Below, piece after piece: positions 10,501-37,281 of a stretch of DNA of 64,000 nucleotides. Position numbers and translations under genes: made by a program. The notes beneath the pieces were generated by a model. It ran no database searches. It worked only from the letters and a program-made list of their open reading frames with translations, and was not told the DNA's origin. Position 1 is the first letter of the stretch. Each line of letters begins with the position of its first letter. Location: positions 124,001 to 188,000 of the IMG/VR virus record IMGVR_UViG_3300036770_003657. One strand, given 5' to 3'.

Positions 10501-13500
10501 AAGGTGTACAAGGTGTACAGGGTGTACAAGGTGTACAGGGCGTTCAAGGTGTACAGGGCGTACAGGGTGTACAGGGCGTACAGGGTGTCCAAGGTGTACA
10601 GGGTGTACAGGGTGTACAGGGTGTACAAGGTGTACAAGGCGTTCAAGGTGTACAAGGCGTTCAAGGTGTTCAAGGTATACAAGGTGTACAAGGTGTACAA
10701 GGTGTACAGGGTGTACAAGGTGTACAAGGTGTACAAGGCGTTCAAGGTGTCCAAGGTGTCCAAGGCGTTCAAGGTGTCCAAGGTGTACAGGGTGTACAAG
10801 GTGTACAGGGTGTACAAGGTGTCCAAGGTGTCCAAGGTGTACAGGGTGTACAGGGTCAGCAAGGTATTCAAGGTCTTGGATTTAATTGGCGTGGAGACTG
10901 GAAAGTAGATGAAGTATATGCCAAGAACGATGCTGTAAGGTATGATGGAACATCTTGGGTTTCTCTAACAAAAGATAATATAGGTAATAACCCAAGGCTT
11001 ACAGAAGGTGTTGAATGGGACGTAATTGCTGCACAGGGTGTACAGGGTGTTCAAGGTATTCAAGGTGTACAGGGCGTACAGGGCGTACAAGGTGTACAAG
11101 GCGTTCAAGGTGTACAGGGTGTTCAAGGCATTCAAGGATTCAGCTTTGTTTGGAGAGGTGAATACGATCACACAGCTGATTATCAACAGAATGATGTAGT
11201 TTATTATAATGGCAGTAGTTTTGTAGCTATTTGGCCAATTAATTTTTATGATGTCATTGGTAGCCAATTCAGTGGTGAAGTACCAGAAGTTATCGGAGTA
11301 TACGGTGAGCCAGGAACATTAAACAGTACATATTGGGCAAGAATGTCAGCTCAGGGCGTACAAGGTGTACAGGGTGTACAAGGCGTACAGGGTGTACAAG
11401 GTGTACAGGGTGTACAAGGCGTACAGGGTGTACAAGGTGTACAGGGTGTACAAGGTGTACAGGGCGTACAAGGTGTACAGGGCGTACAAGGTGTACAGGG
11501 TGTTCAAGGTGTACAAGGTGTACAAGGCGTTCAAGGCGTACAGGGTGTACAAGGAGTACAAGGTGTACAAGGTGTACAAGGCGTTCAAGGCAATCAAGGT
11601 GTACAGGGCGTTCAAGGCGTACAAGGTGTACAAGGCGTACAAGGCGTACAAGGTGTCCAAGGTGTACAAGGCGTTCAAGGCGTTCAAGGCGTACAAGGTG
11701 TACAAGGTGTACAAGGTGTACAGGGTGTACAAGGTGTACAGGGCGTTCAAGGCGTGCAAGGTGTACAAGGTGTACAGGGTGTTCAAGGTGTACAAGGTGT
11801 ACAAGGTGTACAAGGTGTACAAGGCGTACAGGGTGTACAGGGTATACAGGGTGTCCAAGGTGTCCAAGGCGTACAGGGTATACAAGGTTTTGGTATTATT
11901 TGGCGTGGATATTACGACTTCAATACTACATATTTCCAAAACGAAGTTGTTTTCTATGATGGAAATAGTTGGATAGTAAAATACACTGGAGTAGAAGGTG
12001 TTCCTACAGGTATCAGTAATCCAGCAGCAGTTCCTGGACCAACCGATATTGATACTTGGTGGGAAAGATTAAGTAGCCAAGGTATTCAAGGTTTACAAGG
12101 CGTTCAAGGTGTACAAGGTGTACAAGGCGTTCAAGGTGTACAAGGCGTTCAAGGTGTACAGGGTGTACAGGGTGTACAAGGTGTACAAGGCGTACAGGGT
12201 GTACAGGGCGTTCAAGGCGTTCAAGGTGTACAGGGCGTACAAGGCGTACAGGGTGTACAAGGTGTACAAGGCGTACAAGGCGTACAAGGTGTACAAGGCG
12301 TACAAGGTGTACAAGGCGTTCAAGGTGTACAAGGTGTACAAGGCGTTCAAGGCGTACAAGGCGTTCAAGGCGTACAAGGCGTACAAGGTGTACAGGGTGT
12401 ACAAGGCGTCCAAGGCGTTCAAGGCGTCCAAGGCGTACAAGGTGTACAAGGCGTACAGGGTGTACAAGGCGTACAGGGTGTACAAGGTGTCCAGGGTATC
12501 CAAGGTATACAAGGCGGACAGGGTATACAAGGCGTACAGGGCGTTCAAGGTGTACAAGGTGTACAAGGCGTACAGGGTGTACAAGGCGTACAGGGTGTAC
12601 AAGGCGTACAGGGTGTACAGGGCGTACAGGGTGTACAAGGCGTACAGGGTGTACAAGGCGTACAGGGTGTACAAGGCGTTCAAGGCGTACAGGGCGTTCA
12701 AGGTGTCCAAGGTGTACAGGGTGTACAGGGTGTACAAGGTGTCCAAGGTGTACAGGGTGTACAAGGTGTACAAGGTGTACAGGGTGTACAAGGTGTCCAA
12801 GGTGTACAAGGACAACAAGGTATTCAAGGCGGCGGTGTAACTTGGAAAGGCATTTGGAATTCAACAACTAATTACATTGAAAATGATGCAGTATTTTACA
12901 ATGGTAATTCTTGGATCAGCGTATTAGAACCAAATATAGATAATGTACCTAATTTAATGTCAATTTATTGGGACATGCTTGCTAGCCAAGGTATTCAAGG
13001 CTTGCAAGGCGTACAGGGTGTACAGGGTGTACAGGGCGTTCAAGGTGTACAGGGCGTTCAAGGTGTACAGGGCGTTCAAGGTGTACAGGGCGTTCAAGGC
13101 GTACAGGGTGTACAGGGCGTACAAGGTGTACAGGGTGTACAGGGTGTACAGGGTGTACAGGGTGTACAGGGTGTACAGGGTGTACAGGGCGTACAGGGCG
13201 TACAGGGCGTACAGGGCGTACAAGGTGTACAGGGTGTACAGGGTGTACAAGGTGTACAAGGCGTACAAGGCGTACAGGGCGTTCAAGGTGTACAGGGCGT
13301 ACAGGGCGTTCAAGGTGTACAAGGTGTACAGGGTATTCAAGGTGTACAGGGTATTCAAGGTGTAGGATTAATATGGAAAGGTCAGTGGAGTGATTCAGTA
13401 TCTTACATAGCCAACGACATTGTATTTTACGATGGCAGTGCTTATATTTCAGTTCAGTCAACTAACCTAAATAATAATCCAACAATTGAAGATAGATCAA

Positions 13501-16500
13501 CTGAATTTACAACGCCTGGAACTTATACTTGGATAGCACCTCCAGGAGTTACCAGTGTAAGTGCTGTAGCAGTTGGTGGTGGATCTAGACCACAAATAAT
13601 AGGTAGTGGATTCAGCGCCAAGAGTTATGGTGGTGGCGGTGGTGGTTTAGGTTATAAGAATAATATACCAGTCGTTCCTGGCCAAGCTTATACAGTAGTA
13701 GTTGGTAGTGGAGCAGCCACAGGCACATATGGTGATGGTGGTGATAGCTACTTTATCAGTTCAATTACAGTAAAAGGTGGCGGAGCTACTGGCAGCACAG
13801 GTGGTACTTATGTAGGTGATGGCGGTGGTAGCGGTGGTAACGGTGGTGCACCAAACGGAAATTCAAGTGGCGGCGCAGGTGATGGCAGTGCTACATCAGG
13901 TGGTGGTGGTGGTGCAGGTGGTTATAGTGGCAACGGTGGCGTTGGCGGAACTATGTTGGTTGACAGTGGTAATGGAGCCAATTTTGGTGCTAACGGCAGT
14001 GGTGGCGGTGGTGCTGGTGGTGGCGGAAGAAATAGTCACGGTGGCGGCGGTGGCGGTGGTGTTGGTATCTATGGCGAAGGAGACAGTGGACTTGCCAATA
14101 CTACTGCTTATGTACCAAACGTAGGTGGCTGGGGCGGCAATGGTGGTAGTGGTGGTACTACTGGTGGTACTGGAACTCAATCAGGTGTTAATGGTGGTGG
14201 CGGCCTATACGGTGGTGGTGCTGGTGGTGGCTGGGCTGGATATGGTGATGCTGCTGGTGGTGGTGCAGTAAGAATCATATGGGGTGCAGGACGTAGTTTC
14301 CCAAGCACAAACGTCAGTACTGCTAGTGATTTTGTTGAAACATCTACCAATGTTCAATACTGGCAGCGATTTACCAGTCAAGGTATACAGGGCGTACAAG
14401 GTCTTCAAGGTGTACAGGGCGTACAGGGCGTACAGGGCGTACAGGGCGTACAGGGTGTACAAGGCGTACAGGGTGTACAAGGCGTACAAGGTATCCAAGG
14501 TGTACAAGGTGTACAGGGTATCCAAGGTGTACAGGGTGTACAAGGTGTACAGGGTGTACAAGGTGTACAGGGTGTACAAGGTATACAGGGTGTACAAGGT
14601 ATACAGGGTGTACAGGGTGTACAGGGCGTACAGGGCGTACAGGGTGTACAGGGTGTACAAGGTATCCAAGGTGTAAGTATAACTTGGAAGGGAGTTTATG
14701 ATAATGCCGCTCAATATAGCCAAAATGACGTAGTATTTGAAAACGGCAGTAGTTGGATAGCAGTTTATCCATATACAAGTGGAACGTTTAGTGGCATAAG
14801 ACCAGGTGAAACAGTAGGTTGGATCACATATTGGAATATGATGACCAGCCAAGGTATTCAAGGTGTACAGGGTGTACAGGGTGTACAAGGTATTCAAGGT
14901 GTACAGGGTGTACAAGGTATTCAAGGTGTACAGGGTGTACAGGGTATACAAGGTGTACAAGGCGTACAAGGTATTCAAGGTGTCCAGGGTGTACAGGGTA
15001 TACAAGGTGTACAAGGCGTACAAGGTATTCAAGGTGTACAGGGTGTACAAGGTATTCAAGGTGTACAGGGTATCCAAGGTGTACAGGGTGTACAGGGTAT
15101 ACAAGGTGTACAGGGTGTACAGGGTATACAAGGTGTCCAGGGTGTACAGGGTGTACAGGGTATACAAGGTGTACAGGGTGTACAGGGTATTCAAGGTGTA
15201 CAGGGTGTACAGGGTATTCAAGGTGTACAAGGCGTACAAGGTATCCAAGGCGGTCAAGGTATTCAAGGTGTACAGGGTGTACAAGGTATCCAAGGCGTCC
15301 AAGGTGTACAAGGTATTCAAGGTGTACAGGGTGTACAAGGCATCCAAGGTGTACAAGGTGTACAAGGTATTCAAGGCGGTCAGGGTATACAAGGTGTACA
15401 AGGTATACAGGGTGTCCAAGGCATCCAAGGTGTACAAGGTATTCAAGGCTTCCAAGGCACCAAGGGTGAGGGCTTTACATTCTTGGGAGATTGGAGTCCT
15501 GTAACAGAATATATTAAGAATGACAGTGTATACTATAATGGTTCAAGCTATACAAGCACTTACGGTGATATAACATATGCTGGAGGTGGATTTGCTAATA
15601 TTAATCAACGTCCAGGTGAACTAGTAACAATATCAAATGTTAGCCTAACTGCTAGTGGTGTATTCAGTTGCGATAGTGTAAACCTATATAAAGCAGAAGT
15701 TATTAGAGTAAGTGGTACAGTTCCAGCAGGATTTACAATTGAGAATCCAGATAGTCCTGCTCAAGCTCCAACTTACTATACAGCTGGTCAACAAGTTGAT
15801 AATGATTATTATGTAATCACATATCCAAATAATCCAACTACAACCTTTACATTAGGACGTAGTCAATTCTCTGTAGATCCAATTAGTACAACTGGTACAG
15901 GCAGTTTAAGTGGGTTAACATTTAAGGCTGTTCCATGGTTAATTATTAGTGCTCAAGGTATTCAAGGATTACAAGGTGTACAAGGTATACAGGGTGTACA
16001 AGGTATACAGGGTGTACAAGGTATACAGGGCGTACAGGGTGTACAAGGTATACAAGGTGTACAAGGTGTACAAGGTATTCAAGGTGTACAAGGTATTCAA
16101 GGTGGTCAGGGCATACAAGGTGTACAAGGTATTCAAGGTGTACAAGGTATACAGGGTATTATTGGTACTCCAGGTGGTTATACAGCAAATTATAATTGGG
16201 ATAGTAGCACAGCAGTTGCCGATCCAGGTGTAGGTAATGTAACTATTGAGCGTAGTTGGACAGATCAAACTGCTGGTCAAGTTTATATCAATCTTGACAA
16301 GTATGACGCAGATGGACAAGATCGTGCAGCGTGGGTCAATGCTATCAAGTTCTTTGGTAGCGCAAGTAGCTACTATGGTGTTATTACAATTATGCCAGAA
16401 GGTGCTACAAATCAGCGCTGGACCGGTGTTATCACCGTAGTAAATGATCTCAGTACACATTTTAGACTACAGCTAACCTTTGTTGATAGTCAAGGATCAG

Positions 16501-19500
16501 CCCCAACAGTTGGACAAAAATTAGGCGTCAGCTTCCAGCCAGCTGGTCAACAGGGTATCCAAGGCGTACAAGGTATCCAAGGCGTACAAGGTATCCAAGG
16601 TGTACAAGGTGTACAAGGTATCCAAGGTGGTCAAGGCATCCAAGGTGTACAGGGTGTACAAGGTATACAAGGCGTACAAGGCGTACAAGGTATCCAAGGC
16701 GTACAAGGTATCCAAGGTGTACAGGGTGTACAGGGTATACAGGGTGTACAAGGCGTACAAGGCATACAAGGTGGTCAAGGCATACAAGGCGTACAGGGTG
16801 TACAGGGTATCCAAGGTGTACAAGGTGTACAGGGTATACAGGGCGTACAGGGTGTACAAGGTATCCAAGGTGGTCAAGGCATCCAAGGTGTACAGGGTGT
16901 ACAGGGTATACAGGGCGTACAGGGTGTACAAGGTATACAAGGTGGTCAAGGTATACAAGGTGTACAGGGTGTACAGGGTATACAGGGCGTACAGGGTGTA
17001 CAAGGTATCCAAGGTGTACAAGGTATACAGGGTATTCAAGGTTCAAGTATCACGTGGAGAGGCCAATACAGTCCAACAACTGTATACAATACAAACGACG
17101 TAGTATTTGAAAATGGTCAAAGCTGGGTTGGTGTAAGAGGTACAGGTAATAGTCAAACATTAACTAGTGTAGCACACAGCGGTAGTGGTGTGTTTACTTG
17201 TGCTGCTGCTACATTATTTGTTGGTGACCAAGTTACTGTAAGTGGAACAAATGGTGGCAACGTAGTATTACCAGGATACAGTGCTAGTGGTACAAATTAT
17301 TATATTATAGCTACAAATGGTACTACACAATTTACTTTAAGTACTACACTAAACGGATCTGCTGCTACAGCTACCACAGGTACTACAGTCAGTGGATCAA
17401 TGATATTTGTTGTACCAACAGGATTTGGAAATGTAAGACCTAACCTAACACAAACTAATCATTGGAACTTAATGACTAGCCAAGGTATCCAAGGTGTACA
17501 GGGTGTACAGGGTGTACAAGGTATCCAAGGTGTACAGGGTGTACAGGGTATACAAGGTGGTCAAGGCATACAGGGTGTACAAGGTGTACAGGGTGTACAA
17601 GGCATACAAGGTGGTCAAGGTATCCAAGGTGTACAAGGTATACAGGGCGTACAAGGTGTACAAGGTATCCAAGGTGTACAGGGTATTCAAGGTATTACTG
17701 GTTTAGGTATTACTTGGAAAGGAACTTGGACTAGTTCAACAGTTTACAATAGCAATGACGTAGTATTCTACAACGGCAATAGCTGGATTGGTGTACGTGG
17801 AACAGGTAACAGTGTAGCATTAAGTGGTGTAAGTATCGGGGCTAGTGGCGTAATATCCTGTACTGCTACAAGCTTGCCAGCAGGATTCCAAGTAGGTGAT
17901 CAAGTTCTAGTTGCAGGCATTAATAGTGGAACTGGTGCATTACCAAGTTACAGCGCCAGCGGCACTTACTATTATATTATAGCTACAAATGGTAGCACAC
18001 AATTTACCATAAGTACAACAGCTGGTGGTGCTGCTGCTAGTACAACTTCTGGTACTGTAAGTGGTGCAATGACCTTTACTGTAGCAACAGGTTTTGTCAA
18101 TGTCATTCCAAACTTAACTAATACAAACCACTGGAACCAAATGACCAGCCAAGGTATCCAAGGCATCCAAGGTGTACAAGGTGTACAGGGCATACAAGGT
18201 GTACAAGGTGTACAGGGTATACAAGGTGTACAAGGACGTCAAGGTGTACAGGGTGTACAAGGTATCCAAGGTGTACAAGGTGTACAAGGTATACAAGGTG
18301 GTCAAGGCATTCAAGGTGTACAGGGCGTACAAGGTATACAGGGTGTACAAGGACGTCAAGGTGTACAGGGTGTACAGGGCATACAGGGTGTACAAGGCGT
18401 ACAAGGTATACAGGGTGTACAAGGCGTACAAGGTATACAAGGTGGTCAAGGCATTCAAGGTGTACAGGGTGTACAAGGTATACAGGGTGTACAAGGTGTA
18501 CAAGGTATCCAAGGCGTACAGGGTCAGCAAGGTATTCAAGGTTCAGGCTTTAAGTGGCGTGGTGTTTGGGCTCCACAATTTGACTATGCTGTTAGTGATA
18601 TGGTATCACACTTGGGTAGCACATATGTTAGCTTAACTCAGTATCTTCCACAAACACTAGCAAATGTTCAAATTATATCTGCTGGTAAAATAACTTGTAA
18701 CACTCCAACTAATGCATTAAATCCAGGTGATGGTCTTTATGCTATAGGTGTTAAAACTGGAACAGGGTCTATAACTGGTTATAATAGTGCAGGAACAAAT
18801 TATTTCATAACAACAGTTAGCAATAATGCTGGCACTACTACATTAACTTTAAGTGCCAATTATAATCCGTATGTAACAGTTAGTACCACAGCAGGTACAA
18901 GCACTGGTATTACTTTCTACGCACCAACTTTTGTACCAACTAGCTTTACTAAAGATCAATATGATAATGGTCAATCAAGTGTAGGTGCTTGGCAGTTAGC
19001 AGGTTCACAGGGTATTCAGGGTGTACAAGGCGTACAAGGTGTACAAGGTATACAGGGCGTACAAGGTATACAGGGCGTACAAGGAGTACAGGGTATACAA
19101 GGTGTACAAGGTATACAGGGTATTCAAGGTGCAAGCCCAACTTGGAGAGGAACATATACAAGTGGTGTAGCATACAATACTAACGATATGGTATTCCATA
19201 ATGGTAATACATATATGGCCATTTATGGTACAGGTAATACTGTAGCATTAAGTGGTGTAAGTATTGGAGCTAATGGAACATTTACTTGTACAGCAGCAAG
19301 CCCAGCTCTTGTAGTTGGTAATGGTGTTAGAATCGTGGGCGCTGCCAGTGGTACTGGTAGTATTAGTGGTTACACAGAAGGTGCAACTTATTATATCACA
19401 GCTACAAACGGTAGTACAAGCTTTACTTTAAGTTCCACAATCGGCGGTGCAGCAGTAACAACTACTGCTGGTACAAGCACAGGATTAACATTCCAACATC

Positions 19501-22500
19501 CAGTAAGTTTTGCTAATCAAGTTCCAGCAACAGGTCAACCCCCAGTAGTTAATACAACTTACTGGAATCAGATGACCAGCCAAGGTATCCAGGGTGTACA
19601 GGGTGTACAGGGTGTACAAGGTATCCAAGGTGTACAAGGCGTACAAGGTATACAAGGTGGTCAAGGTATACAGGGTGTACAGGGTATACAGGGCGTACAA
19701 GGTATACAAGGTATTCAAGGCTTTAGTGTAACTTACAGAGGACAATACAATCCTGCTACAGTATACACACAGAACGATGTGGTATTTGAAAATGGACAAA
19801 GCTGGATTGCTATATGGCCAATTACAACAAGTACATTTAGTAATGTAAGACCAGGAGTAACAGCAGGTTGGGCTAACTATTGGGGCAACTTAACTAGCCA
19901 AGGTATACAGGGTGTACAAGGTGTACAAGGTGTACAAGGTATTCAAGGTGTACAAGGACGTCAAGGTGTACAAGGTATACAAGGTGTACAAGGCGTACAA
20001 GGTATTCAAGGTGTACAAGGTGTACAGGGTATACAGGGATTAAGTATCAATTGGAAAGGCCAGTTTAATCCTGCTACAGCATATAGTCAAAACGATGTAG
20101 TATTTGAAAACGGCGCAAGCTGGATAGCAAAATGGCCATATGCTAGTGGAACCTTTACAGGAATCAGACCAGGAGTAACAGTAGGCTGGGCTACATACTG
20201 GGATCAAATGACCAGCCAAGGTATCCAAGGTGTACAGGGTGTACAGGGTATCCAAGGTGTACAGGGTGTACAGGGTATCCAAGGTGTACAGGGTGTACAA
20301 GGTATACAGGGTGTACAAGGTGTACAAGGTATCCAAGGTGGTCAAGGTATACAAGGCGTACAAGGTATTCAAGGTGTACAAGGCGTACAAGGTATTCAAG
20401 GTGTACAGGGTGTACAAGGTATACAGGGCTTTAGTGTAACTTATAGAGGAATCTATAACAATGCTACAGTTTATACTCAAAATGATGTAGTATTTGAAAA
20501 TGGACAAAGTTGGATAGCAGTGTATCCAATTACAACAGGTACATTTAGTGGTCAACGTCCAAGTTTAGCAAATACAACATATTGGGGTCAATTAACAAGT
20601 CAAGGTATACAGGGTGTACAAGGTGTACAAGGTATACAAGGTGGTCAAGGTATCCAAGGTGTACAAGGTGTACAAGGTATACAGGGCGTACAAGGTGTAC
20701 AAGGTATCCAAGGTGTACAGGGTGTACAGGGTATACAGGGTGTACAAGGACGTCAAGGTGTACAGGGCATACAAGGTGTACAGGGTGTACAAGGTATACA
20801 AGGTGTACAAGGTGTACAAGGTATCCAAGGTGGTCAAGGTATCCAAGGCGTACAAGGTATTCAAGGTGTACAAGGTGTACAGGGTATCCAAGGATTTAGC
20901 GTAACTTACAGAGGAATATATAATAACGCCACAGTTTACACTCAAAATGATGTAGTATTTGAAAATGGACAAAGTTGGATAGCAGTATATCCAATAACTA
21001 GTGGAACATTTAGTGGTCAACGTCCAAGTTTAGCAAACACAACATATTGGGGTCAGTTAACAAGTCAGGGTATACAAGGTGTACAGGGTGTTCAAGGTAT
21101 TCAAGGTGGTCAAGGTATACAAGGTGTACAAGGTATACAAGGTATCCAAGGTGGTCAAGGTATTCAAGGTGTACAGGGTGTACAGGGTATACAGGGTGGA
21201 CAAGGTATTCAAGGTCGTCAAGGTATACAAGGTATCCAAGGTGGACAAGGTATACAGGGTATTCAAGGTGGTCAAGGTATCCAAGGTGTACAAGGTGTAC
21301 AAGGTATCCAAGGTGGACAAGGTATCCAAGGTGTACAAGGCGTACAAGGTATACAGGGTGGACAAGGTATACAAGGAGTACAGGGTGTACAAGGTATACA
21401 AGGTGGACAAGGTATTCAAGGTATCCAAGGTATCCAAGGATTTAGTGTTACATATCAAGGTGTATACAATAATGCTACAGTGTACACTCAAAATGATGTA
21501 GTATTTGAAAATGGACAAAGCTGGATTGCAATATATCCAGTAACAACAGGAACATTTAGTGGAATACGTCCAGGTGTAACAGTAGGTTGGGCTACATATT
21601 GGGGTAGATTAAGTCAACAAGGTATACAGGGTATACAGGGTGGACAAGGTATACAGGGTGTACAAGGTATCCAAGGTATCCAAGGTGGACAGGGCATACA
21701 GGGTGTACAAGGTATCCAAGGTATCCAAGGAGGCCAAGGTATTCAAGGTATCCAAGGTGGCCAAGGTATACAGGGTGTCCAAGGTGTTCAAGGTATACAG
21801 GGTGGACAAGGTATACAAGGTAGACAGGGTATACAGGGTCAACAAGGACTACAGGGTACACAGGGTCAACAAGGTATCCAAGGACAGCAAGGTACACAGG
21901 GTATACAGGGTCAACAAGGACTACAGGGTACACAAGGACAACAAGGTATCCAAGGTCAACAAGGTACACAGGGTATACAGGGTCAACAAGGATTACAGGG
22001 TACACAAGGACAACAAGGTATACAAGGTCAACAAGGTACACAGGGTATACAGGGTCAACAAGGTACACAAGGACTACAGGGTACACAAGGACAACAAGGT
22101 ATACAAGGACAGCAAGGTACACAGGGTATACAGGGACAACAAGGTACACAAGGTCAGCAAGGTATACAGGGTACACAAGGTCAGCAGGGGACACAAGGTG
22201 TTCAAGGATTCCAAGGATTCCAAGGTTATCAAGGTGTACAGGGTGAACAAGGTATACAGGGTGTACAAGGTATTCAAGGATTCCAAGGATTTATTGGTGA
22301 TCAAGGTACAACAGGTTCACAAGGTACAACAGGTGATACAGGCTTACAGGGATTACCAGGACCACAAGGTACAGATGGACAAACTGGAGCACAAGGTCCA
22401 CAAGGTCCACAAGGTTTAGATGGAACAATTGGAACATTAAGTTTAGCAACATTCAAGAGCGTAGTAGCAGGTGCCGCAAACTTCCAAGACTTCCAAACAG

Positions 22501-22517
22501 CAGTAGCAGCACTATAA
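4515..22517 (+). CDS. Giant collagen-like (Gly-X-Gln)n fibre protein with repeated Trp-rich bead modules (6000 aa)
   Basis: Uninterrupted 18-kb ORF with Gly at every third residue in the tracts ([12 protein letters not shown]). Tracts are separated by 25 W(R/K)G.[WY]..Y..ND.V.(Y/F).G.S[WY]...P...YW modules, one of which holds a Gly-rich domain. Confidence 0.9.
5430..22220 (+). repeat. Degenerate 9-bp coding tandem repeats (GG[T/C] [G/A]T[A/T/C] CA[A/G])n in about 25 tracts
   Basis: Directly visible, e.g. ggtgtacaa/ggtgtacag/ggcgtacaa; variation is mostly at third codon positions. Confidence 0.95.
21828..22043 (+). repeat. 72-bp higher-order repeat x3 ([24 protein letters not shown])
   Basis: Units at 21828-21899, 21900-21971 and 21972-22043 encode the same 24 aa. 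Confidence 0.85.
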
Positions 22518-30256: not shown

Positions 30257-31560
30257 TATAAATCTGCCTTAGGTCTTAGAACCTTACTTAGAGCTTGACG
30301 TTCAGGAACATCTTCGCCATTAATTCTATTTACATTGACGTTGTTAATAAATCCAGTTTTCTGAGTAGTTCTAACCTGCTTCCAATATTCTGGATTCTCT
30401 AAAGGGTTCTTACCTTGGCTTGGAGTGATGGCAACATATTGTACATTGCCGTATTCTATTAGGTCATTGATTACATATGATACTAGATCATTGTAAACAC
30501 CTTTTGGTGTAGCAAAATTAGCACTAGTGTTAGTTAATGTATGACGTATAGCGTCTTCCATCTTAACCCATCTAAAACCATCAAACCTAAATAATCTATT
30601 AGGAGCAAAATCAATGCGTAAAAAATAATCGTTTTTATATGGGTTAGCAGGAAACATTATCCCGTGCCCAAACTGATATCCATTAGGTGGAAATCCATCA
30701 CCTAAAAGATATCCTGCGTATCCACTGCGTATAGCACGACCATGAATTCTACTGGCATCTAATCCTACAGTACTAGCATCAATATCCATTTGATCAGCAG
30801 TTTCAATTACAGGATTGCCCGTAGTTCTATCTATAGCCAATGTATAAAATTGTCTAGTTTCAAAGCCATTCATTGATGCATCTGCTTCAGCTTGGGCTAA
30901 TATGCTATCATTAATTTGTAGTTCTTGACCCTTAGTACTTAAAATATCACGTAGTGTTTGATCTGTATTTTCACCTGCTGGCTGATCTAGTATATCAGCA
31001 AAAGCTTGACCATCAACTATTTTCTTAAGTTTTAATCTATATAAATGTGGCCACCAAGTTTGACTAAATCCTTCACTAGCTCTAGCAACATCCTCAATAA
31101 CAAAATATCGAGGCAGTGCTATGTTATAATCATTTAGAGCAAACTGATCAACAAGATGAGGCAATTCTATTACATCACCACTTAATGGTTTTCGCCCCAC
31201 TGTTCGTATCCAGTCGTTTATATGTACAGTGGCAAATATAGTATCATTATCTATGAATAAGCCAAATTGACTTAGGTTAAAGTCTAAATTTTGTACTTGG
31301 TAATGACCTCTTATTTTATAAATGCTAGGGTCATATTTGCGATCACGATTCTCCAGTAGAAGTAAGTCTTGTATATTACTTTCTTTAGTTTCAGCATAGT
31401 GAGGCTGATCTGCTGTGGCATTTTCTGGAGCCGTATTCGAACCAACATATTTGTGTAGATAAAAATCTGTACCGCCAACTTGAAACATTTCACTGATTTG
31501 ACGATCAATGAATTTGTAGTCATTTCCACGTTCTGGACGATATAAACTTATGCGGGGCAT
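30256..31560 (-). CDS. gp14: Neck protein (T4 gp14-like)
   Basis: Synteny with gp13/gp15; DLLLLENRDRKYD, FGLF..DTIFATVH and GDVIELPHL motifs typical of gp14-like proteins. Confidence 0.6.
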   Translation of the reverse strand: MPRISLYRPERGNDYKFIDRQISEMFQVGGTDFYLHKYVGSNTAPENATADQPHYAETKESNIQDLLLLENRDRKYDPSIYKIRGHYQVQNLDFNLSQFGLFIDNDTIFATVHINDWIRTVGRKPLSGDVIELPHLVDQFALNDYNIALPRYFVIEDVARASEGFSQTWWPHLYRLKLKKIVDGQAFADILDQPAGENTDQTLRDILSTKGQELQINDSILAQAEADASMNGFETRQFYTLAIDRTTGNPVIETADQMDIDASTVGLDASRIHGRAIRSGYAGYLLGDGFPPNGYQFGHGIMFPANPYKNDYFLRIDFAPNRLFRFDGFRWVKMEDAIRHTLTNTSANFATPKGVYNDLVSYVINDLIEYGNVQYVAITPSQGKNPLENPEYWKQVRTTQKTGFINNVNVNRINGEDVPERQALSKVLRPKADL

Positions 31561-31564
31561 AAGG

Positions 31565-31584
31565 TATTTATCAGCAGATAAATA
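31565..31584. promoter_or_regulatory. Back-to-back divergent late promoters
   Basis: ATAAATA on the minus strand (31565-31571) for gp14 and on the plus strand (31578-31584) for gp13. Confidence 0.7.
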
Positions 31585-31601
31585 TCATGGAGACAGCAAA
31601 T

Positions 31602-32366
31602 ATGACTACTACAACAATGCAGGAACGTGAAAAAATCTACAAATATTGTAGACTAATGTTAGGTGATGGGATGGTTGATGTTGAATTAGATCCAGATCAC
31701 TATGAAATAGCCCTAGATCGTGCCCTAAGTCGTTATCGTCAAAAAAGTCCAAATGCTGTAGAAGAAGCTTTTTATTTCTTAGAACTAAAAGAAGATACCA
31801 ATGATTATAGATTGCCTAAGGAAATCATAGAAGTTCGTAGTATATATCGTCGCACTATAGGCAGTAGAACAGCAGGTGGTAGTGGTGGTACACAGTTTGA
31901 GCCATTTAATTTAGCCTATACAAACACTTATCTTTTGAACAGCACTATGTTAGGCGGTATTGCCACTTATGATATGTTTGCTCAATATCAGGAATTAGTG
32001 GGACGTATGTTTGGTGCTTTTATTGAGTTTCAATGGATACCAACTACACATACACTGCGTATCCTACAACGTAGTTATGGTGATGGTGAGCAAGTTTTAA
32101 TACGTGGCTATAATTATAGACCAGATTATATCTTATTACAAGACACCTATGCCAGTCAGTGGTTTAAGGATTATACATTGGCTAATTGTAAATTAATGTT
32201 AGGTGAAGCACGTGGTAAGTTTAGTCAAATAGCAGGACCAGGTGGATCGGGTGGATTAAACGGTGCAGACCTAAAATCAGCAGCTAAAGAAGAAATTGAG
32301 AAGTTAGAAAAAGAAATAGATACCTATGTAGCAGGTGGTACAGGATATACGCTAGTCATCGGTTAA
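31602..32366 (+). CDS. gp13: Neck protein (T4 gp13-like)
   Basis: YCRLMLGDGMVDVELD..ALDRAL motif. Start moved from 31587 to 31602 because SD GGAG (31589-31592) precedes it and 31587 is only 2 nt from the promoter box. Confidence 0.7.
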   Translation: MTTTTMQEREKIYKYCRLMLGDGMVDVELDPDHYEIALDRALSRYRQKSPNAVEEAFYFLELKEDTNDYRLPKEIIEVRSIYRRTIGSRTAGGSGGTQFEPFNLAYTNTYLLNSTMLGGIATYDMFAQYQELVGRMFGAFIEFQWIPTTHTLRILQRSYGDGEQVLIRGYNYRPDYILLQDTYASQWFKDYTLANCKLMLGEARGKFSQIAGPGGSGGLNGADLKSAAKEEIEKLEKEIDTYVAGGTGYTLVIG

Positions 32367-32374: not shown

Positions 32375-32403
32375 TTGACTTTATCAAATAAATCTATTAT
32401 TAT
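32375..32403 (+). promoter_or_regulatory. Sigma70-type (early) promoter of the dNMP kinase gene
   Basis: TTGACT (32375-32380), 17-nt spacer, TATTAT (32398-32403); SD GAAAGGAG at 32408-32415. Confidence 0.7.
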
Positions 32404-32421
32404 CATAGAAAGGAGTAAACT

Positions 32422-33093
32422 ATGATTGTAGGTATTTGTGGCTTGATTGGTAGTGGTAAAGACACTATTGCTGATTATCTTGTTAATTTTCATGAATTTC
32501 GTAGGGAAAGTTTTGCTCGTAGTTTGAAGGATGCAGTAGCAGCCGTATTTGGTTGGGACCGTGACTTGTTAGAAGGTCGAACTAAAGAAAGTAGAGAGTG
32601 GCGAGAACAAGTAGACTTTTGGTGGAGTAATAGACTAGGAATAAAAATTACACCACGATGGGTACTACAGAACTGGGGTACTGAAGTATGTCGTCAAAAC
32701 TTCCACGATGATATATGGATAGCCAGTTTAGAAAATAAGCTACGAACCAGTAAGGATAATGTGGTAATTAGCGATTGTAGATTCCCTAACGAAATCAGTG
32801 CAATAAAAAATGCTAATGGAATAATACTTTGGGTACAGCGAGGTGAATTACCTGATTGGTATGATATTGCCTTGGACGCTAATAGTGGCAATTTAAAGGC
32901 ATTTAATTATATGCAGGATATAGGAATACACCCCAGTGAATGGAAATGGATTGGTACAGAGTTTGACATTATTATTGATAATAATAGCAGTTTAAATAAC
33001 TTATATAATCAAATTGAAAGTGTCATATTAAATAGACTAAAGTTTAGTGTTGATAACAAGGTGACTTTTATATATTCAACCGTATCAGAATAG
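32422..33093 (+). CDS. Deoxynucleoside monophosphate kinase (T4 gp1-like)
   Basis: P-loop GLIGSGKDT; TPRWVLQNWGTEVCR; VISDCRFPNE; HPSE. Confidence 0.9.
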   Translation: MIVGICGLIGSGKDTIADYLVNFHEFRRESFARSLKDAVAAVFGWDRDLLEGRTKESREWREQVDFWWSNRLGIKITPRWVLQNWGTEVCRQNFHDDIWIASLENKLRTSKDNVVISDCRFPNEISAIKNANGIILWVQRGELPDWYDIALDANSGNLKAFNYMQDIGIHPSEWKWIGTEFDIIIDNNSSLNNLYNQIESVILNRLKFSVDNKVTFIYSTVSE

Positions 33094-33104
33094 CCTTATA
33101 AGTT

Positions 33105-33176
33105 GATTTCTCCTAGTTTTAGGCAGCATTTTTTACCAAATCAAGCTAAATACTTGAGTAAGATTTAGGAGAAATC
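33105..33176 (+). promoter_or_regulatory. Anti-SD/SD inverted repeat with a late promoter between the arms
   Basis: GATTTCTCCTA (33105-33115) is the exact reverse complement of TAGGAGAAATC (33166-33176, containing the sheath SD); CTAAATA lies at 33146-33152. Confidence 0.75.
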
Positions 33177-33181
33177 TAAGA

Positions 33182-36100
33182 ATGGCTCAACTTAACTCAC
33201 CTGGCGTCGTAGTCACAGTTGTCGACGAAAGTTTTTATACACCGGCAGCCCCAAGCACAGTACCTTGTATAGTAGTAGCAACAGCAGAAAACAAACCTAA
33301 TGGAGCCAACACTGGTATCGCTCCAGGTACATTAAAAAGTAATGCAGGGCTAGCATACTTAATCACTAGTCAAAGAGACTTATCTGAAACATTTGGAGTC
33401 CCAATTTTTAGGACTGATTCAAATAATAATCCTGTACATGCTGGTGAACAAAACGAATATGGTTTACAGGCTGCTTATAGTTTATTAGGAGTCAGTAATA
33501 GAGCATATGTGGTTAGAGCAGATGTTGACTTAGGTGCATTAGATCCACAAGCACTTGCTCCACAAGCTGAACCAGAAGCAGGTACTTATTGGTTTGACGT
33601 TGTTAAAAGTTCTTGGGGTATTTTTGAGTGGAATGGTGATGTTAAAGGCGTAGGTAGAGGTCAAACATTTACTAAAAAAGTACCAACAATTGTAACAGAT
33701 CCTGCTAAAGTTGATAGTATAACAGGTGCTCCTAAAGCCAGTGTAGGGACAGTAGGTGATTATGCTGTAGTAAGTTTAATGAACCTAGCAACAAGCTACA
33801 GTGGTGCAGATGTGATGTGGTATAGAAATAGTACAGAATGGGTTAAAGTTGGTAGTGATGATTGGCGTATTAGTTGGCCAGCTGCTATTAGTACTAAATC
33901 TACAATTAATATACCAATAGGCGATGACGATCTAAGTATTGAGATTGATGGTGTTTCAGGATTTGATCCTCTAACTGAAACTATTACATTACCAACAGGT
34001 ACTGTTAGTGCAAGTACTATAGCGTCAGCAATTAATACTTGGAGCCCAGGACCACAACCTCTTGTAGAAGCTCGTGTAAATTCTAGTGGCCGTCTTGAGC
34101 TTTATAGTAGAACTGGGAGTTTTACAATAGGTGGAGCAGCAGCCCAACATATAGGAATAAATGCAGGAACTTATAATAGTCCAAAATTAGAAGTAGCTCC
34201 TCATACAAGAGTTCCATTATTTAAAACAGGTGATCCTGCACCAAGACCAACAGGTAGTGTATGGATTAAGACAACAACAGCCAACGGCGGAGCAGAATTT
34301 GCTCTTAAAAAATATAATGCTGATTCAGATATATTTGAATCAATAACAGCTCCGATGTATCCTAATGCAGCAGAAGCGATTTATGCTCTGGATAAAACAG
34401 GTGGTGAAAGATTACCAGTAGGTAGTGTTTATGTAAAAACAAATCAAACAGAATATCTTTATACATACCCAACTAGTGATAAAGGTCCTTTAAGTGCAGA
34501 CTTTAAGTTTTATAGAAAAAACACTATGGGTGCGACCACTATAACTAGTAAGAAAATTGAAAATGCAACACTGGCTCCTAATATTCTTGATTTAGTTTTT
34601 CAAGAAACAAAAGCAGGTATGGCAGGATATGGATCACCTGTAACTGTTACTGTAGAAGTGTATGGTGTTGCAAGCGATGCAGAAGATATTGCTAAGGCAA
34701 TTAATGATCAAACAGATCTAGTAAATGTTAGAGCACAAGTTGATAGTCAAAACAGACTAGTAATTCAACACTTGTTAGGTGGTGATATTAGAATTGAGGA
34801 AAGTAGCGTATCAGCAGAAAAATTAATAACAATTTTATTTTCAGGTCAAAAAAATGCTCAGTTACATGCTAGTGATTTTGATGATTCCACAGCAAGTTTT
34901 CAACCACAATGGGAAGTAAGCCATTGGGATGCATTAAGATTTACAGCAAGTACTGATGCACCAACTACATTAACTTTGGACCAAACATTATGGTATAATA
35001 GTGTAGTTGATGAAGTTGATATTATGGTACATGATGGTCAAAAATGGAGAGGATATAAAGAAATATTCCCACTTACAGACGATAATGGTCCACAAGTGGC
35101 AGCAACTAGACCGCTTACCCAAAGCACAGGATCTCCATTAGTTGATGGTGATTTATGGATAGATACTAGTGATATTGATAATTATCCAATGATTTATAGA
35201 TTTGATACAAGTAGACCAGGAACTACTTTTACAAAGTGGGTACTGTTAGATAAGACAGATCAAAGTAGTGAAGATGGTGTCTTATTTGCAGATGCACGAT
35301 GGACTGATATCGGTGTAGGGGCTACATATGGATCAAGCACTATACAAGAACTTTTACAGAGTAGTTTTGTAGATCCAGATTGTCCAGATCCTGCATTATA
35401 TCCAAAAGGTATGTTGCTATGGAATATGCGTCGCAGCGGTTTCAATGTTAAGAAATTTGTACAAAATTATATCGATGTAAATGAAGTTAATACACGTTAT
35501 GAAGTTTTAGGTATTAGCGGATTTATGATAGATGAATCCATGACTGATTATTATCCACATCGTTGGGTAACAATTAGCGGTAACCAAGAAAATGGTGCCG
35601 GATACTTTGGTCGCCATGCACAACGTAGAGTAGTAGTACAAAGTTTACAAGCAGTAACAAATAGTTCACGTGATATACGTGAAGAAGCCAGAGTGTTTAA
35701 CTTATTATCTTGTCCAGGATATCCAGAATTGATTGGTGAACTAATTAATCTAAACTTTGATCGTGGACTAACAGCGTTTATTGTAGGTGATACACCTGCT
35801 AGGTTAACTCCAGATGCAACAAGCTTAAAAGCTTGGGGTGATAACTTAAGACTAAGTGTAGAGGACAATGAACAAGGTGCTCCTAGTTATGATGAATACA
35901 TGGGTATGTTTTATCCATGGGGATTCACTAGTGACTTGTCAGGACGTAATATTGTAGTTCCACCAAGTCATATGATGCTAAGAACAATAGCATTAAGTGA
36001 TAGTGTAAGTTATCCTTGGTTTGCCCCAGCAGGTACACGACGTGGTGGTATTACAAATGCTAGTAACGTAGGTTATATTGATGACGAAGGCGAATTTGTA

Positions 36101-36547
36101 GTAGTTGCTCTAAATACTGGACAGCGTGATACATTATATGATGTTAAGATTAATCCAATTACATTCTTTACAGGCGCTGGTCTTGTAAACTATGGTCAAA
36201 AAACTCGTGCTAAAAATGCAAGTGCTCTAGATCGTATCAACGTAGCAAGACTAGTAATTTATCTACGTAGGCAGCTAGATATTTTAGCTAAACCATATGT
36301 ATTTGAACCTAATGATAAGATTACAAGAGATGAAATTAAAGGTGCAGTGGAAAGTTTATTGTTAGAACTAGTAGGTCAAAGAGCATTATATGATTATATT
36401 GTAGTGTGTGATGAGTCAAATAATACTCCTGCTAGAATTGATAGAAACGAGTTGTATGTTGATGTTGCTATTGAGCCTGTTAAAGCAGTTGAATTTATCT
36501 ATATTCCACTGAGACTAAAGAATACGGGTGAAATTGCTGGTCTATAA
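33182..36547 (+). CDS. gp18: Contractile tail sheath protein (T4 gp18-like, 1121 aa)
   Basis: N-terminal SPGVVVTVVDES; C-terminal PWFAPAGTRRG, INPI, GQKT, ALDRINVARL, FEPND..TR, PVKAVEFIYI. Confidence 0.95.
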   Translation: MAQLNSPGVVVTVVDESFYTPAAPSTVPCIVVATAENKPNGANTGIAPGTLKSNAGLAYLITSQRDLSETFGVPIFRTDSNNNPVHAGEQNEYGLQAAYSLLGVSNRAYVVRADVDLGALDPQALAPQAEPEAGTYWFDVVKSSWGIFEWNGDVKGVGRGQTFTKKVPTIVTDPAKVDSITGAPKASVGTVGDYAVVSLMNLATSYSGADVMWYRNSTEWVKVGSDDWRISWPAAISTKSTINIPIGDDDLSIEIDGVSGFDPLTETITLPTGTVSASTIASAINTWSPGPQPLVEARVNSSGRLELYSRTGSFTIGGAAAQHIGINAGTYNSPKLEVAPHTRVPLFKTGDPAPRPTGSVWIKTTTANGGAEFALKKYNADSDIFESITAPMYPNAAEAIYALDKTGGERLPVGSVYVKTNQTEYLYTYPTSDKGPLSADFKFYRKNTMGATTITSKKIENATLAPNILDLVFQETKAGMAGYGSPVTVTVEVYGVASDAEDIAKAINDQTDLVNVRAQVDSQNRLVIQHLLGGDIRIEESSVSAEKLITILFSGQKNAQLHASDFDDSTASFQPQWEVSHWDALRFTASTDAPTTLTLDQTLWYNSVVDEVDIMVHDGQKWRGYKEIFPLTDDNGPQVAATRPLTQSTGSPLVDGDLWIDTSDIDNYPMIYRFDTSRPGTTFTKWVLLDKTDQSSEDGVLFADARWTDIGVGATYGSSTIQELLQSSFVDPDCPDPALYPKGMLLWNMRRSGFNVKKFVQNYIDVNEVNTRYEVLGISGFMIDESMTDYYPHRWVTISGNQENGAGYFGRHAQRRVVVQSLQAVTNSSRDIREEARVFNLLSCPGYPELIGELINLNFDRGLTAFIVGDTPARLTPDATSLKAWGDNLRLSVEDNEQGAPSYDEYMGMFYPWGFTSDLSGRNIVVPPSHMMLRTIALSDSVSYPWFAPAGTRRGGITNASNVGYIDDEGEFVVVALNTGQRDTLYDVKINPITFFTGAGLVNYGQKTRAKNASALDRINVARLVIYLRRQLDILAKPYVFEPNDKITRDEIKGAVESLLLELVGQRALYDYIVVCDESNNTPARIDRNELYVDVAIEPVKAVEFIYIPLRLKNTGEIAGL

Positions 36548-36551: not shown

Positions 36552-36559
36552 TATAAATA
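36552..36559 (+). promoter_or_regulatory. T4 late promoter TATAAATA
   Basis: Exact consensus 21 nt upstream of the tail tube ATG. Confidence 0.8.
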
Positions 36560-36580: not shown

Positions 36581-37207
36581 ATGGCAATTGCAACATTAAA
36601 TAGATTTACAGTGCCTTTATCAACAGACGCTAGTGCTAGTAACCAAGGCATGTTAATGCCCAAACTCAAATATCGTTTTAGAATTATGTTTGAGAATTTT
36701 GGTGTTACTAGTCCTTCAACAGAGTTGACCAAGCAGGTACAAACAGCAGCTAAACCCACTGTACAGTTTCAAAATATGGTAATTGAGACATATAACAGTA
36801 AAATTAATTATGCAGGTAAACCAACTTGGAATCCAATTACAGTGGTTATTAGAGATGATGCTACAGGTATTGTAAGCAAGTTAGTTGGTGAGCAGATGCA
36901 GAAACAGTTCGATTTCTTCGAACAGGCCAGTGCTGCTAGTGGTGTAGATTACAAGTTCTTAATGCGTATTGAAATAACAGAAGGCGGAAACGGTATTCAC
37001 GTTCCAACTGTATTAGAAACTTGGGAGTGCTATGGTTGCTATATCCAACAGGCTAATTGGCAATCATTGAGTTATGCAGAAGCAGCTCCACAAACAATTG
37101 ACCTTAATATTCAACCAGATAATTGTATCCAAATTCCACAAGGCAGTGGTGTTGGTGCAGCTATTGGCAGAAGTGTGCGTACAATGGCAACTGGTTCTGG
37201 TGCTTAA
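36581..37207 (+). CDS. gp19: Tail tube protein (T4 gp19-like)
   Basis: Follows the sheath gene; PKLKYRFR..AAKPTV..INYAGKPTWNPITVVIRDD..ETWECYGC. Confidence 0.85.
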   Translation: MAIATLNRFTVPLSTDASASNQGMLMPKLKYRFRIMFENFGVTSPSTELTKQVQTAAKPTVQFQNMVIETYNSKINYAGKPTWNPITVVIRDDATGIVSKLVGEQMQKQFDFFEQASAASGVDYKFLMRIEITEGGNGIHVPTVLETWECYGCYIQQANWQSLSYAEAAPQTIDLNIQPDNCIQIPQGSGVGAAIGRSVRTMATGSGA

Positions 37208-37220
37208 TATTAGAACAAAT

Positions 37221-37244
37221 AAAAAGGGGCTTAGGCCCTTTTTT
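37221..37244 (+). terminator. Intrinsic (bidirectional-type) terminator
   Basis: AAAAAGGGGC-TTAG-GCCCTTTTTT after the tube gene. Confidence 0.85.
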
Positions 37245-37281
37245 ATTGACTTTTTATAATAATAGCATATTTTGAACTATA

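What the first reader, a model, noticed from the sequence alone, without database searches (positions are those of the whole stretch)
32375..33184. Anti-Shine-Dalgarno switch keeps the sheath gene silent on early read-through RNA
Seen: the dNMP kinase gene has a sigma70 promoter and no strong terminator before the sheath gene. GATTTCTCCTA (33105-33115) pairs perfectly over 11 bp with TAGGAGAAATC (33166-33176), which contains the sheath SD, and the late box CTAAATA (33146-33152) lies between the arms. Established: T4 genes e, soc and 49 are controlled by RBS-sequestering hairpins present only on early transcripts. Inference: the same logic, applied here to a major tail protein.
Basis: partly seen in the sequence, partly recalled or inferred. 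Interest (0 to 1): 0.65.

Follow-up and report, generated by a model that had tools for sequence, protein, structure and literature searches.

The report
Transcript-specific masking of sheath ribosome site

Summary
GATTTCTCCTA (33105-33115) is a perfect 11-bp complement of TAGGAGAAATC (33166-33176), which holds the sheath Shine-Dalgarno. CTAAATA (33146-33152) lies between the arms.

The window is part of a complete 399,796-bp uncultured jumbo myophage, distantly related to the Rak2/Atu_ph07/PA5oct group.

CTAAATA looks like a real late promoter. All 57 distinct upstream sequences from 80 metagenomic relatives have [C/A]TAAATAC 29-34 nt before the sheath ATG. A second clade has canonical TATAAATA at the same position. 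The genome also encodes a gp55-like late sigma factor.

The upstream arm is the only conserved block in an otherwise variable spacer. Ten cultured distant relatives have a different arm that matches their own ribosome site. Across seven independent lineages, the true arm/site assignment is the best of all 5040 permutations.

The complementarity is absent in all 29 relatives where a convergent gene separates kinase and sheath (0/29 versus 18/28).

The kinase's sigma70-type promoter is conserved, and no terminator-like site precedes the sheath.

No RNA data could be obtained, so read-through and silencing remain inferred.

Verdict: interpretation supported. It is a new member of the T4 e/soc/49/I-TevI kind.

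The parts
32375..32403 (+). Sigma70-type promoter of the dNMP kinase gene (TTGACT, 17 nt, TATTAT). It is the presumed source of early transcripts that run on towards the sheath gene.
   Evidence: 10 of 12 matches. TTGAC plus a -10-like hexamer is conserved in front of the kinase gene in nearly all relatives.
32422..33093 (+). dNMP kinase gene (223 aa), a nucleotide-metabolism gene sitting between late structural genes on the same strand.
   Evidence: phrog_139 E 3e-52 and PF21448. Adaptor-kinase-sheath synteny is conserved.
33105..33115 (+). 5' arm (anti-Shine-Dalgarno), GATTTCTCCTA. It is present only on RNA that starts upstream of the late promoter.
   Evidence: Apart from a T-run, it is the only conserved block in the variable spacer of 16 close relatives.
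33129..33134 (+). T-run inside the loop, conserved in close relatives (ATTTTTTGC type). Its role is unknown. It is not placed as a terminator tail.
33146..33152 (+). Late-promoter box CTAAATA. The late transcript is predicted to start near 33158, by the T4 rule of about 6 nt after the box.
   Evidence: [C/A]TAAATAC sits 29-34 nt before the sheath ATG in all 57 distinct relatives, with TATAAATA in a second clade. A gp55-like sigma factor is present in the genome.
33161..33177 (+). Local mini-hairpin of the short leader (AGATTT / AAATCT) that shows AGGAG in a 5-nt loop.
   Evidence: fold of 33158-33225.
33166..33176 (+). 3' arm TAGGAGAAATC, which contains the sheath Shine-Dalgarno (GGAG at 33168-33171).
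   Evidence: It is invariant in close relatives.
33182..36547 (+). Tail sheath gene (1121 aa).
   Evidence: phrog_10581 E 2e-234 and PF17482. tblastn finds sheath proteins of jumbo phages at 34-48% identity.

Best explanation
This is a transcript-of-origin switch on the translation of the tail-sheath gene. RNA that starts upstream carries GATTTCTCCTA. That includes early RNA from the kinase's sigma70-type promoter, and also any read-through from the adaptor gene's late promoter. The sequence pairs with the sheath Shine-Dalgarno region about 50 nt downstream and hides it from 30S subunits. RNA started at the late promoter CTAAATA, which lies in the loop, begins near 33158 and lacks the 5' arm, so its ribosome site is open. 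The sheath protein is therefore made only from its own late transcript. Shown here: the pairing, its conservation, the change of both arms together between lineages, the homology of the late box, and the conserved upstream promoter. Inferred: that read-through occurs, the exact late start site, and the size of the translational effect.
For: Geometry and fold. The computed cost of opening the Shine-Dalgarno-to-AUG stretch is 3.5 kcal/mol on the short leader and 10.4-11.2 on long leaders; in close relatives it is 4-6 versus mostly 10-16. The long-minus-short difference is 6.8 kcal/mol against a genome mean of 1.1 (sd 2.5), rank 16 of 438. Late box: conserved position and sequence in all relatives, with CTAAATA and TATAAATA interchanging. 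ATAAATA is enriched 8.5-fold upstream of genes in this genome. A gp55-like sigma factor is present. 5' arm: RNAalifold on 16 close relatives predicts only this stem. Eight of the nine substitutions at the two variable C positions paired with G are C to U, which keeps a G-U pair. 85.7% of cells are paired, against 42-66% in slid registers. Thirteen of 16 close relatives have p<0.05 against shuffles. Between lineages: SP27, Atu_ph07, Phosso, PA5oct, Vibrio 2.275.O, CBB, XaC1 and Muenster each have a different arm next to ATAAATA that matches their own ribosome site. Cognate pairs average -14.3 kcal/mol against -9.6 for non-cognate pairs, permutation p 5e-5. For seven independent lineages the true assignment is the best of 5040. 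The distance from arm to late box varies from 6 to 30 nt, which does not fit a fixed DNA promoter element. Natural experiment: 0 of 29 relatives with a convergent minus-strand ORF between kinase and sheath have significant complementarity, against 18 of 28 without it. The upstream promoter is conserved and no terminator-like site is found. Precedent: T4 e, soc, 49 and I-TevI, with a 100-fold effect for e (PMC3014915).
Against: There is no transcript or translation data: no RNA run was listed, and the phage is an uncultured IMG/VR record. The late start site is not mapped. Within the close clade there is no two-sided compensatory change, because the 3' arm is invariant; covariation is seen only between clades. 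CTAAATA is the less gene-proximal box variant in this genome: 9 of 92 copies lie near gene starts, against 33 of 90 for ATAAATA. The stem is only 11 bp across a 50-nt loop. The absolute opening cost ranks 46 of 438. Three close relatives are weak (L003, L015, L017). The kinase stop codon lies 11 nt before the arm, and 5-8 nt before it in the closest relatives read, so terminating ribosomes could open the stem transiently. The 0/29 versus 18/28 contrast is not corrected for phylogeny. Rho-dependent termination cannot be excluded.
Confidence: 0.7

Rival explanations
1. Translational coupling. The stem keeps the sheath site closed unless ribosomes finishing the kinase gene melt the 5' arm, so that on long RNA sheath synthesis depends on kinase translation rather than being silenced.
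For: The kinase stop codon is 11 nt before the arm in the window, and 5-8 nt before it in the closest relatives read. That is within reach of a terminating ribosome, on general knowledge of ribosome footprints.
Against: The stop-to-arm distance is not conserved; it is about 25-30 nt in SP27 and CBB. What is conserved is the arm's relation to the late box and the ribosome site. A few relatives with a convergent gene upstream still keep a relic of the arm. Coupling an enzyme to a protein needed in bulk has no obvious logic.
Confidence: 0.08
2. An RNA processing or stability element. The long-range stem is a nuclease site or a protective 3' structure for the kinase mRNA, and its overlap with the ribosome site is secondary.
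For: Phage intergenic stems often serve as processing sites (general knowledge). No terminator marks the kinase 3' end.
Against: The stem is 11 bp, shorter than typical RNase III substrates. In every lineage the 3' arm is specifically the Shine-Dalgarno and spacer, whatever its sequence. No Rfam family matches.
Confidence: 0.07
3. A DNA-level element. The inverted repeat is an operator or an upstream part of the late promoter, and its complementarity to the ribosome site is incidental.
For: In Rak2-like phages the arm abuts ATAAATA, and a pyrimidine-rich CCTC-type core recurs before other late boxes.
Against: The distance from arm to box varies from 6 to 30 nt. The arms extend into gene-specific flanks. 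Cognate arm/site pairs beat non-cognate ones. In this genome only 4 of 41 late-box genes show the complementarity.
Confidence: 0.05
4. A chance inverted repeat with no function.
For: About 15 of the 41 repeats of 11 bp or more in the genome are expected by chance.
Against: The per-gene chance is 0.0007. The arm is conserved in 16 relatives. The same layout occurs with different sequences in distant phages.
Confidence: 0.03

Closest known systems
Phage T4 gene e (lysozyme) translation-initiation hairpin
   Same: The Shine-Dalgarno and/or AUG is sequestered on longer early transcripts. TATAAATA-type late promoters lie so that late transcripts lack the 5' strand and are well translated (PMC3014915, section 29).
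   Different: The T4 structure is a compact local hairpin in front of a lysis gene. Here the pairing is long-range (50-nt loop that holds the promoter), it sits in front of the major tail-sheath gene, and the upstream neighbour is a kinase gene with its own sigma70-type promoter. The effect is measured in T4 (100-fold) and not measured here.
T4 soc, gene 49 and intron-encoded I-TevI; Aeh1 mobE
   Same: Inhibitory RNA helices at the ribosome site act only on transcripts started upstream. A late promoter lies next to the 5' strand (PMC3014915, which also cites Gibb & Edgell for mobE).
   Different: The target genes differ (decoration protein, endonucleases). No sequence similarity to those hairpins was seen. 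Those cases are experimentally shown.
ATAAATA late-promoter motif of Rak2-like jumbo phages (CBB, GAP32)
   Same: The same box, with a gp55-like sigma factor, precedes structural genes (PMC5259590). This genome has both.
   Different: The CBB and PA5oct papers describe the motif or promoters, but the passages returned for my promoter/terminator term searches do not mention a complementary arm masking the ribosome site. The window's box is the CTAAATA variant.
Shine-Dalgarno-masking RNA thermometers (fourU / ROSE types)
   Same: A U/C-rich strand pairs with the Shine-Dalgarno.
   Different: Those are single-transcript sensors opened by heat. Here the switch is set by which promoter made the RNA. 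No Rfam match was found.

Membership tests
T4-type transcript-specific masking of a ribosome site (e / soc / 49 / I-TevI kind) | The Shine-Dalgarno and/or start codon lies in a helix on the long transcript. | tested here: met
   There is an 11-bp perfect stem over the Shine-Dalgarno in the MFE and centroid of 131-nt and 326-nt RNAs. The opening cost is 10.4-11.2 versus 3.5 kcal/mol. This is in silico only.
T4-type transcript-specific masking of a ribosome site (e / soc / 49 / I-TevI kind) | A late promoter is placed so that late transcripts lack the 5' strand. | tested here: met
   CTAAATA at 33146-33152 lies 30 nt downstream of the 5' arm. The box is conserved in all relatives and alternates with TATAAATA. 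The start site itself is not mapped.
T4-type transcript-specific masking of a ribosome site (e / soc / 49 / I-TevI kind) | The phage has a gp55-type late sigma factor that uses such promoters. | tested here: met
   G000:C1:76907-77677 is 39% identical to the CBB late sigma factor, E 1e-46. ATAAATA is enriched 8.5-fold upstream of genes.
T4-type transcript-specific masking of a ribosome site (e / soc / 49 / I-TevI kind) | Earlier transcripts from an upstream promoter extend into the gene. | not testable with these tools
   A conserved sigma70-type promoter and the absence of a terminator-like site make this plausible. No RNA run was listed.
T4-type transcript-specific masking of a ribosome site (e / soc / 49 / I-TevI kind) | The long transcript is translated much less than the short one. 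| not testable with these tools
   This needs reporters, toeprinting or ribosome profiling.
T4-type transcript-specific masking of a ribosome site (e / soc / 49 / I-TevI kind) | The pairing is maintained in evolution. | tested here: met
   Within the clade there is conservation with C-to-U changes only. Between clades the arms differ but match their own ribosome site.
Intrinsic (rho-independent) terminator | A G+C-rich stem, a short loop and a U-tract directly after the stem. | tested here: not met
   No site was found between 33093 and 33182. The T-run at 33129-33134 lies inside the loop and not after a stem.
Any curated RNA family (Rfam 15) | A match at or near the gathering score. | tested here: not met
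   The only hit is a chance one, at 14.6 bits against a gathering score of 60.

The most novel reading that the evidence does not exclude
The sheath switch may be one half of an old, clade-wide system that gates translation by where the transcript started, at the boundary between the kinase gene and the late structural genes. The sheath ribosome site is masked on RNA from upstream in lineages as far apart as Asteriusvirus, Mimasvirus, Alcyoneusvirus, Polybotosvirus, Wroclawvirus and this metagenomic clade. In some relatives the mirror image also exists: the kinase's own ribosome site pairs with a sequence between the -35 and -10 boxes of its sigma70 promoter, so late read-through RNA would not make kinase. 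The masking is lost when a convergent HNH-like gene breaks the read-through.
Probability: 0.45. Interest if true: 0.6.

Novelty: new member of a known kind. Interest (0 to 1): 0.5.

Why it matters
If true, the T4 device for keeping late proteins off early RNA is not a peculiarity of a few T4 genes. It would be an ancient, selectively maintained feature in front of the major tail protein of a large group of jumbo phages. It would explain how an early-type enzyme gene can sit inside a late structural operon without causing premature sheath synthesis. For annotation and expression work, it means RNA coverage alone would overestimate early sheath production. Several relatives with the same layout are cultured (CBB, GAP32, SP27, PA5oct, Atu_ph07), so the idea can be tested directly.

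Tried and rejected
- **RNA evidence:** The look-up of sequencing runs listed no RNA run.
- **Rfam:** no family matched.
- **Terminator between kinase and sheath:** none was found by scan or fold.
- **5' arm read as a Shine-Dalgarno for a minus-strand gene:** no start codon follows it on that strand (read).
- **T-run plus late box read as a sigma70 promoter:** the spacing is only 8-12 nt.
- **Within-clade covariation:** none is possible, because the 3' arm is invariant.
- **General rule for all late genes in this genome:** not supported by the strict test, which gave 4 of 41 at p<0.05. A looser opening-energy comparison gave p 0.004, but it is confounded by the type of upstream sequence.
- **Genome-wide tendency of ribosome sites to pair with upstream sequence:** none was seen.
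- **Mirror switch at the kinase gene:** absent in the window (p 0.56), in close relatives, and in Rak2-like phages.
- **Literature:** the CBB and PA5oct passages returned by my term searches do not mention the arm.
Full report
**1. What is in the sequence**

The window is bases 124001-188000 of a single 399,796-bp contig with 36.6% G+C. It is an IMG/VR virus record that CheckV rates as 100% complete.

The gene order around the finding is:
- a head-tail adaptor gene at 31587-32366 (phrog_211);
- a dNMP kinase gene at 32422-33093 (phrog_139, PF21448);
- a 1121-aa tail sheath gene at 33182-36547 (phrog_10581, E 2e-234);
- a tail tube gene at 36581-37207.

By tblastn, the sheath is 34-48% identical to the sheaths of the jumbo phages Phosso, Atu_ph07, PA5oct, SCTP-2 and the Rak2-like group.

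- arms at 33105-33115 and 33166-33176, 11 nt, 100% complementary, 50 nt apart;
- CTAAATA at 33146-33152;
- GGAG at 33168-33171, and the ATG at 33182.

TTGACT-17 nt-TATTAT lies at 32375-32403. No terminator-like site lies between the kinase stop codon and the sheath start. The first strong terminator downstream is at 37218-37247, after the tube gene.

**2. Is it more than chance?**

An 11-bp inverted repeat alone is weak evidence. The genome has 41 such repeats with loops of 3-100 nt, against 15.5 +/- 4 in two kinds of shuffle.

The specific configuration is much rarer:
- A complement of 11 bp or more between the 52 nt upstream and this ribosome site arose in 14 of 20,000 shuffles.
- By duplex energy against shuffled upstream sequence, the sheath is second of 41 late-box genes (p 0.007). 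Genes without a late box give exactly 5.0% at p<0.05, so the test is calibrated.
- The stem is present in the MFE and the centroid of a 326-nt RNA.
- The computed cost of exposing the Shine-Dalgarno-to-AUG stretch is 3.5 kcal/mol on a leader starting at about 33158, and 10.4-11.2 on long leaders.
- The long-minus-short difference of 6.8 ranks 16 of 438 genes, against a mean of 1.1 and sd of 2.5.
- On the short leader, a weak local hairpin (AGATTT/AAATCT) displays AGGAG in its loop.

**3. The late box is real**

In this genome, ATAAATA is the most enriched 7-mer upstream of genes: 48 observed against 5.6 expected. The two flanking late genes have canonical copies, near 31578-31584 and 36553-36559.

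Within this genome CTAAATA is less gene-proximal: 9 of 92 copies lie near gene starts, against 33 of 90 for ATAAATA. Alone it would be doubtful.

Comparison settles the question. 80 IMG/VR loci encode sheaths that are 50-78% identical over the N-terminal 300 residues. All 57 distinct upstream sequences carry [C/A]TAAATAC 29-34 nt before the ATG. The nearest clade has GCTAAATA. A second clade has canonical TATAAATA at the homologous position.

The genome also encodes a gp55-like late sigma factor, 39% identical to that of phage CBB with E 1e-46. ATAAATA has been proposed as the late motif of CBB and GAP32 (PMC5259590).

**4. The 5' arm is under selection in close relatives**

In the 16 closest sequences, the stretch from the late box to the ATG is almost invariant, while the spacer upstream is highly variable. 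The exceptions are the block (A)TTTCTCC(T) and a T-run (alignment A1).

- RNAalifold predicts one consensus helix only, and it is exactly this stem.
- At the two variable C positions paired with G, eight of nine substitutions are C to U, which keeps a G-U pair.
- 85.7% of cells are paired, against 42-66% when the partner is slid by 1-3 columns.
- There is no two-sided compensatory change inside this clade, because the 3' arm never varies. This is conservation compatible with pairing, not covariation.
- Thirteen of 16 close relatives and 5 of 12 in the second clade beat shuffles at p<0.05.

**5. The arms change together between distant lineages**

Ten annotated phages were fetched. Nine keep a dNMP-kinase-sized gene immediately upstream of the sheath on the same strand, annotated as dNMP kinase in CBB, GAP32, XaC1 and Muenster; in Phosso a hypothetical gene lies between kinase and sheath.

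Each has ATAAATA 46-62 nt before the sheath ATG. At or within about 30 nt upstream of that box, each has a segment complementary to its own ribosome site:

| Phage | Upstream arm | Ribosome-site partner |
|---|---|---|
| SP27 | AATTAAATCCTTCA | TTGGAGGATTTAAT |
| Atu_ph07 | ATATAACCCC | GGGGTTATAT |
| Phosso | ATAAGAACGG | CGTTCTTAT, next to its GGGG |
| PA5oct | GTGTTATATCT | GGGAGATTATAACAC |
| CBB | GATTTAATCCTCTA | TTGGAGGATTAAATG |

XaC1, Muenster and Vibrio 2.275.O behave likewise. GAP32 (p 0.11) and SCTP-2 (p 0.08) are weak.

Cognate arm/site duplexes average -14.3 kcal/mol, against -9.6 for non-cognate combinations (permutation p 5e-5). Taking one representative from each of seven independent lineages, the true assignment is the single best of all 5040 permutations.

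The arm-to-box distance is about 30 nt in the window's clade, 6-8 nt in the second clade, and from 0 to about 30 nt in the cultured phages (0 in the Rak2-like ones). The arms reach into lineage-specific flanks of the Shine-Dalgarno. Both facts argue for RNA pairing and against a fixed DNA promoter element.

**6. Link to read-through**

The kinase's TTGAC...TAnnAT promoter is conserved across nearly the whole family. This marks the kinase as a host-polymerase (early-type) gene embedded in a late module.

In 29 relatives, a convergent minus-strand ORF lies between kinase and sheath. It is Cys-rich, 111-138 aa, with only a weak HNH_3 match below Pfam's cut-off. None of the 29 has significant arm/site complementarity. 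Of the relatives where the kinase directly precedes the sheath, 18 of 28 do (Fisher p 4e-8).

Some of the 29 keep a decayed relic, such as TTTTCTCC or GATTTTATC. This is what relaxed selection would produce once same-strand read-through is interrupted. The test is not corrected for shared ancestry.

**7. Mechanism proposed**

RNA started at the kinase promoter carries the 5' arm and folds so that the sheath Shine-Dalgarno is paired. The same holds for any RNA started further upstream, including late read-through from the adaptor gene's promoter. RNA started at the late box, at about 33158 by the T4 rule, lacks the arm and is translated.

This is the logic established for T4 genes e, soc, 49 and I-TevI, with a 100-fold effect measured for e (PMC3014915, section 29).

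Three steps were not shown here: that early RNA crosses the junction, the position of the late start site, and the size of the effect. No RNA run was listed for this sequence.

**8. Caveats and rivals**

- The kinase stop codon is 11 nt before the arm, and 5-8 nt before it in the closest relatives read. Terminating ribosomes could therefore open the stem briefly. That would make the block leaky, or in the rival view make it a coupling device. The stop-to-arm distance is not conserved (about 25-30 nt in SP27 and CBB), which counts against coupling as the selected function.
- A nuclease site or stability element cannot be excluded. It would not explain why the 3' partner is always the ribosome site.
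- A chance origin is contradicted by sections 4-6.

**9. How general is it in this genome?**

It is not a rule for all late genes: 4 of 41 late-box genes reach p<0.05. A looser opening-energy comparison favours late-box genes (p 0.004), but it is confounded by the type of upstream sequence.

A few other genes show a late box inside a hairpin that masks the ribosome site:
- a 484-aa virion structural protein (G000 261366-262820, minus strand; 13-bp stem; opening difference 14.9 kcal/mol);
- a 203-aa gene directly after a nine-tRNA array (318496-319107, minus strand);
- an 812-aa gene (238214-240652, minus strand).

In Rak2-like phages, the gene after the sheath also has a complementary segment just before ATAAATA (p 0.04-0.12).

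**10. Comparison with known systems, novelty and score**

It works like the T4 e/soc/49/I-TevI hairpins, and it meets every defining feature that could be tested in silico. The features that need RNA or protein data are untested.

It differs from those cases in three ways: the target is the major tail sheath gene, the geometry is a long-range stem with the promoter in the loop, and it is conserved across several jumbo-phage genera.

The CBB and PA5oct passages that I read describe the late motif or promoters, but not this arm. My literature search was limited to the held library.

I rate it a new member of a known kind, with interest 0.5.

Noticed in passing
L036:1388-1453, L042:1070-1135, L058, L059, L067, L069, L072, L076 (upstream of the dNMP kinase gene in distant relatives): This is the mirror image of the sheath switch. 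The kinase's own Shine-Dalgarno pairs with a sequence between the -35 and -10 boxes of its sigma70-type promoter. The changes are truly compensatory (CTCCTAG/CTAGGAG, CCCCTGTA/TACGGGGG, CCTAGTTAG/CTAACTAGG). The duplexes are -16 to -25 kcal/mol and beat all 300 shuffles in each locus. RNA read through from the adaptor's late promoter would then not make kinase. The feature is absent in the window itself (p 0.56) and in Rak2-like phages.
   Followed up: partly
G000:C1:261366-262870 (= L094:1370-2870, minus strand), outside the window: This gene has the strongest ribosome-site masking in the genome. A 13-bp stem (TGGGGTTTTGATA / TATCAAAACCCCA) carries GATAAATA in its loop and 3' arm, in front of a 484-aa virion structural protein. 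The opening-cost difference is 14.9 kcal/mol.
   Followed up: partly
G000:C1:318496-319930 (= L095:1497-2930, minus strand), outside the window: A 203-aa gene with no PHROG match lies directly after an array of nine tRNA genes. Its late box sits inside a hairpin whose 3' arm covers TAGGAG, which suggests masking on tRNA-array read-through RNA. There are 18 tRNA genes in this 5-kb stretch.
   Followed up: partly
window 4515-22517 (+): A single 6000-aa ORF is made of collagen triple-helix repeats with CBM_5_12 carbohydrate-binding modules, probably a giant fibre protein. A second very long ORF (4094 aa) lies at G000 354502-366786.
   Followed up: partly
L029:2051-2386 and L036:2055-2471 (minus strand), and 27 other relatives: A Cys-rich 111-138-aa ORF is inserted convergently between kinase and sheath and overlaps the kinase 3' end. 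It has only a weak HNH_3 match below Pfam's cut-off. It may be a mobile endonuclease. Its presence coincides with loss of the sheath anti-Shine-Dalgarno arm.
   Followed up: partly
L081:2141-2160, and the same place in L087-L090 (sheath leaders of Rak2-like phages): A conserved palindrome (TATACGAATATTCGAATA type) lies a few nt after the late box. It would form a stem-loop at the very 5' end of the late sheath mRNA. It has no counterpart in the window.
   Followed up: no
window 33129-33134 and alignment A1 columns 39-45: A T-run (ATTTTTTGC type) is conserved in the loop between the 5' arm and the late box. In several relatives it lies in the loop of a small inner hairpin whose stem changes in a compensatory way (for example TTGAGC/GCTCAA and ATTGGG/CCCAAT). 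Its function is unknown.
   Followed up: no
window 31547-31563: The palindrome CTTATGCGGGGCATAAG lies between the divergent 434-aa structural gene (minus strand, start at 31560) and the adaptor gene, just upstream of the adaptor's late box. It overlaps the minus-strand gene's start.
   Followed up: no
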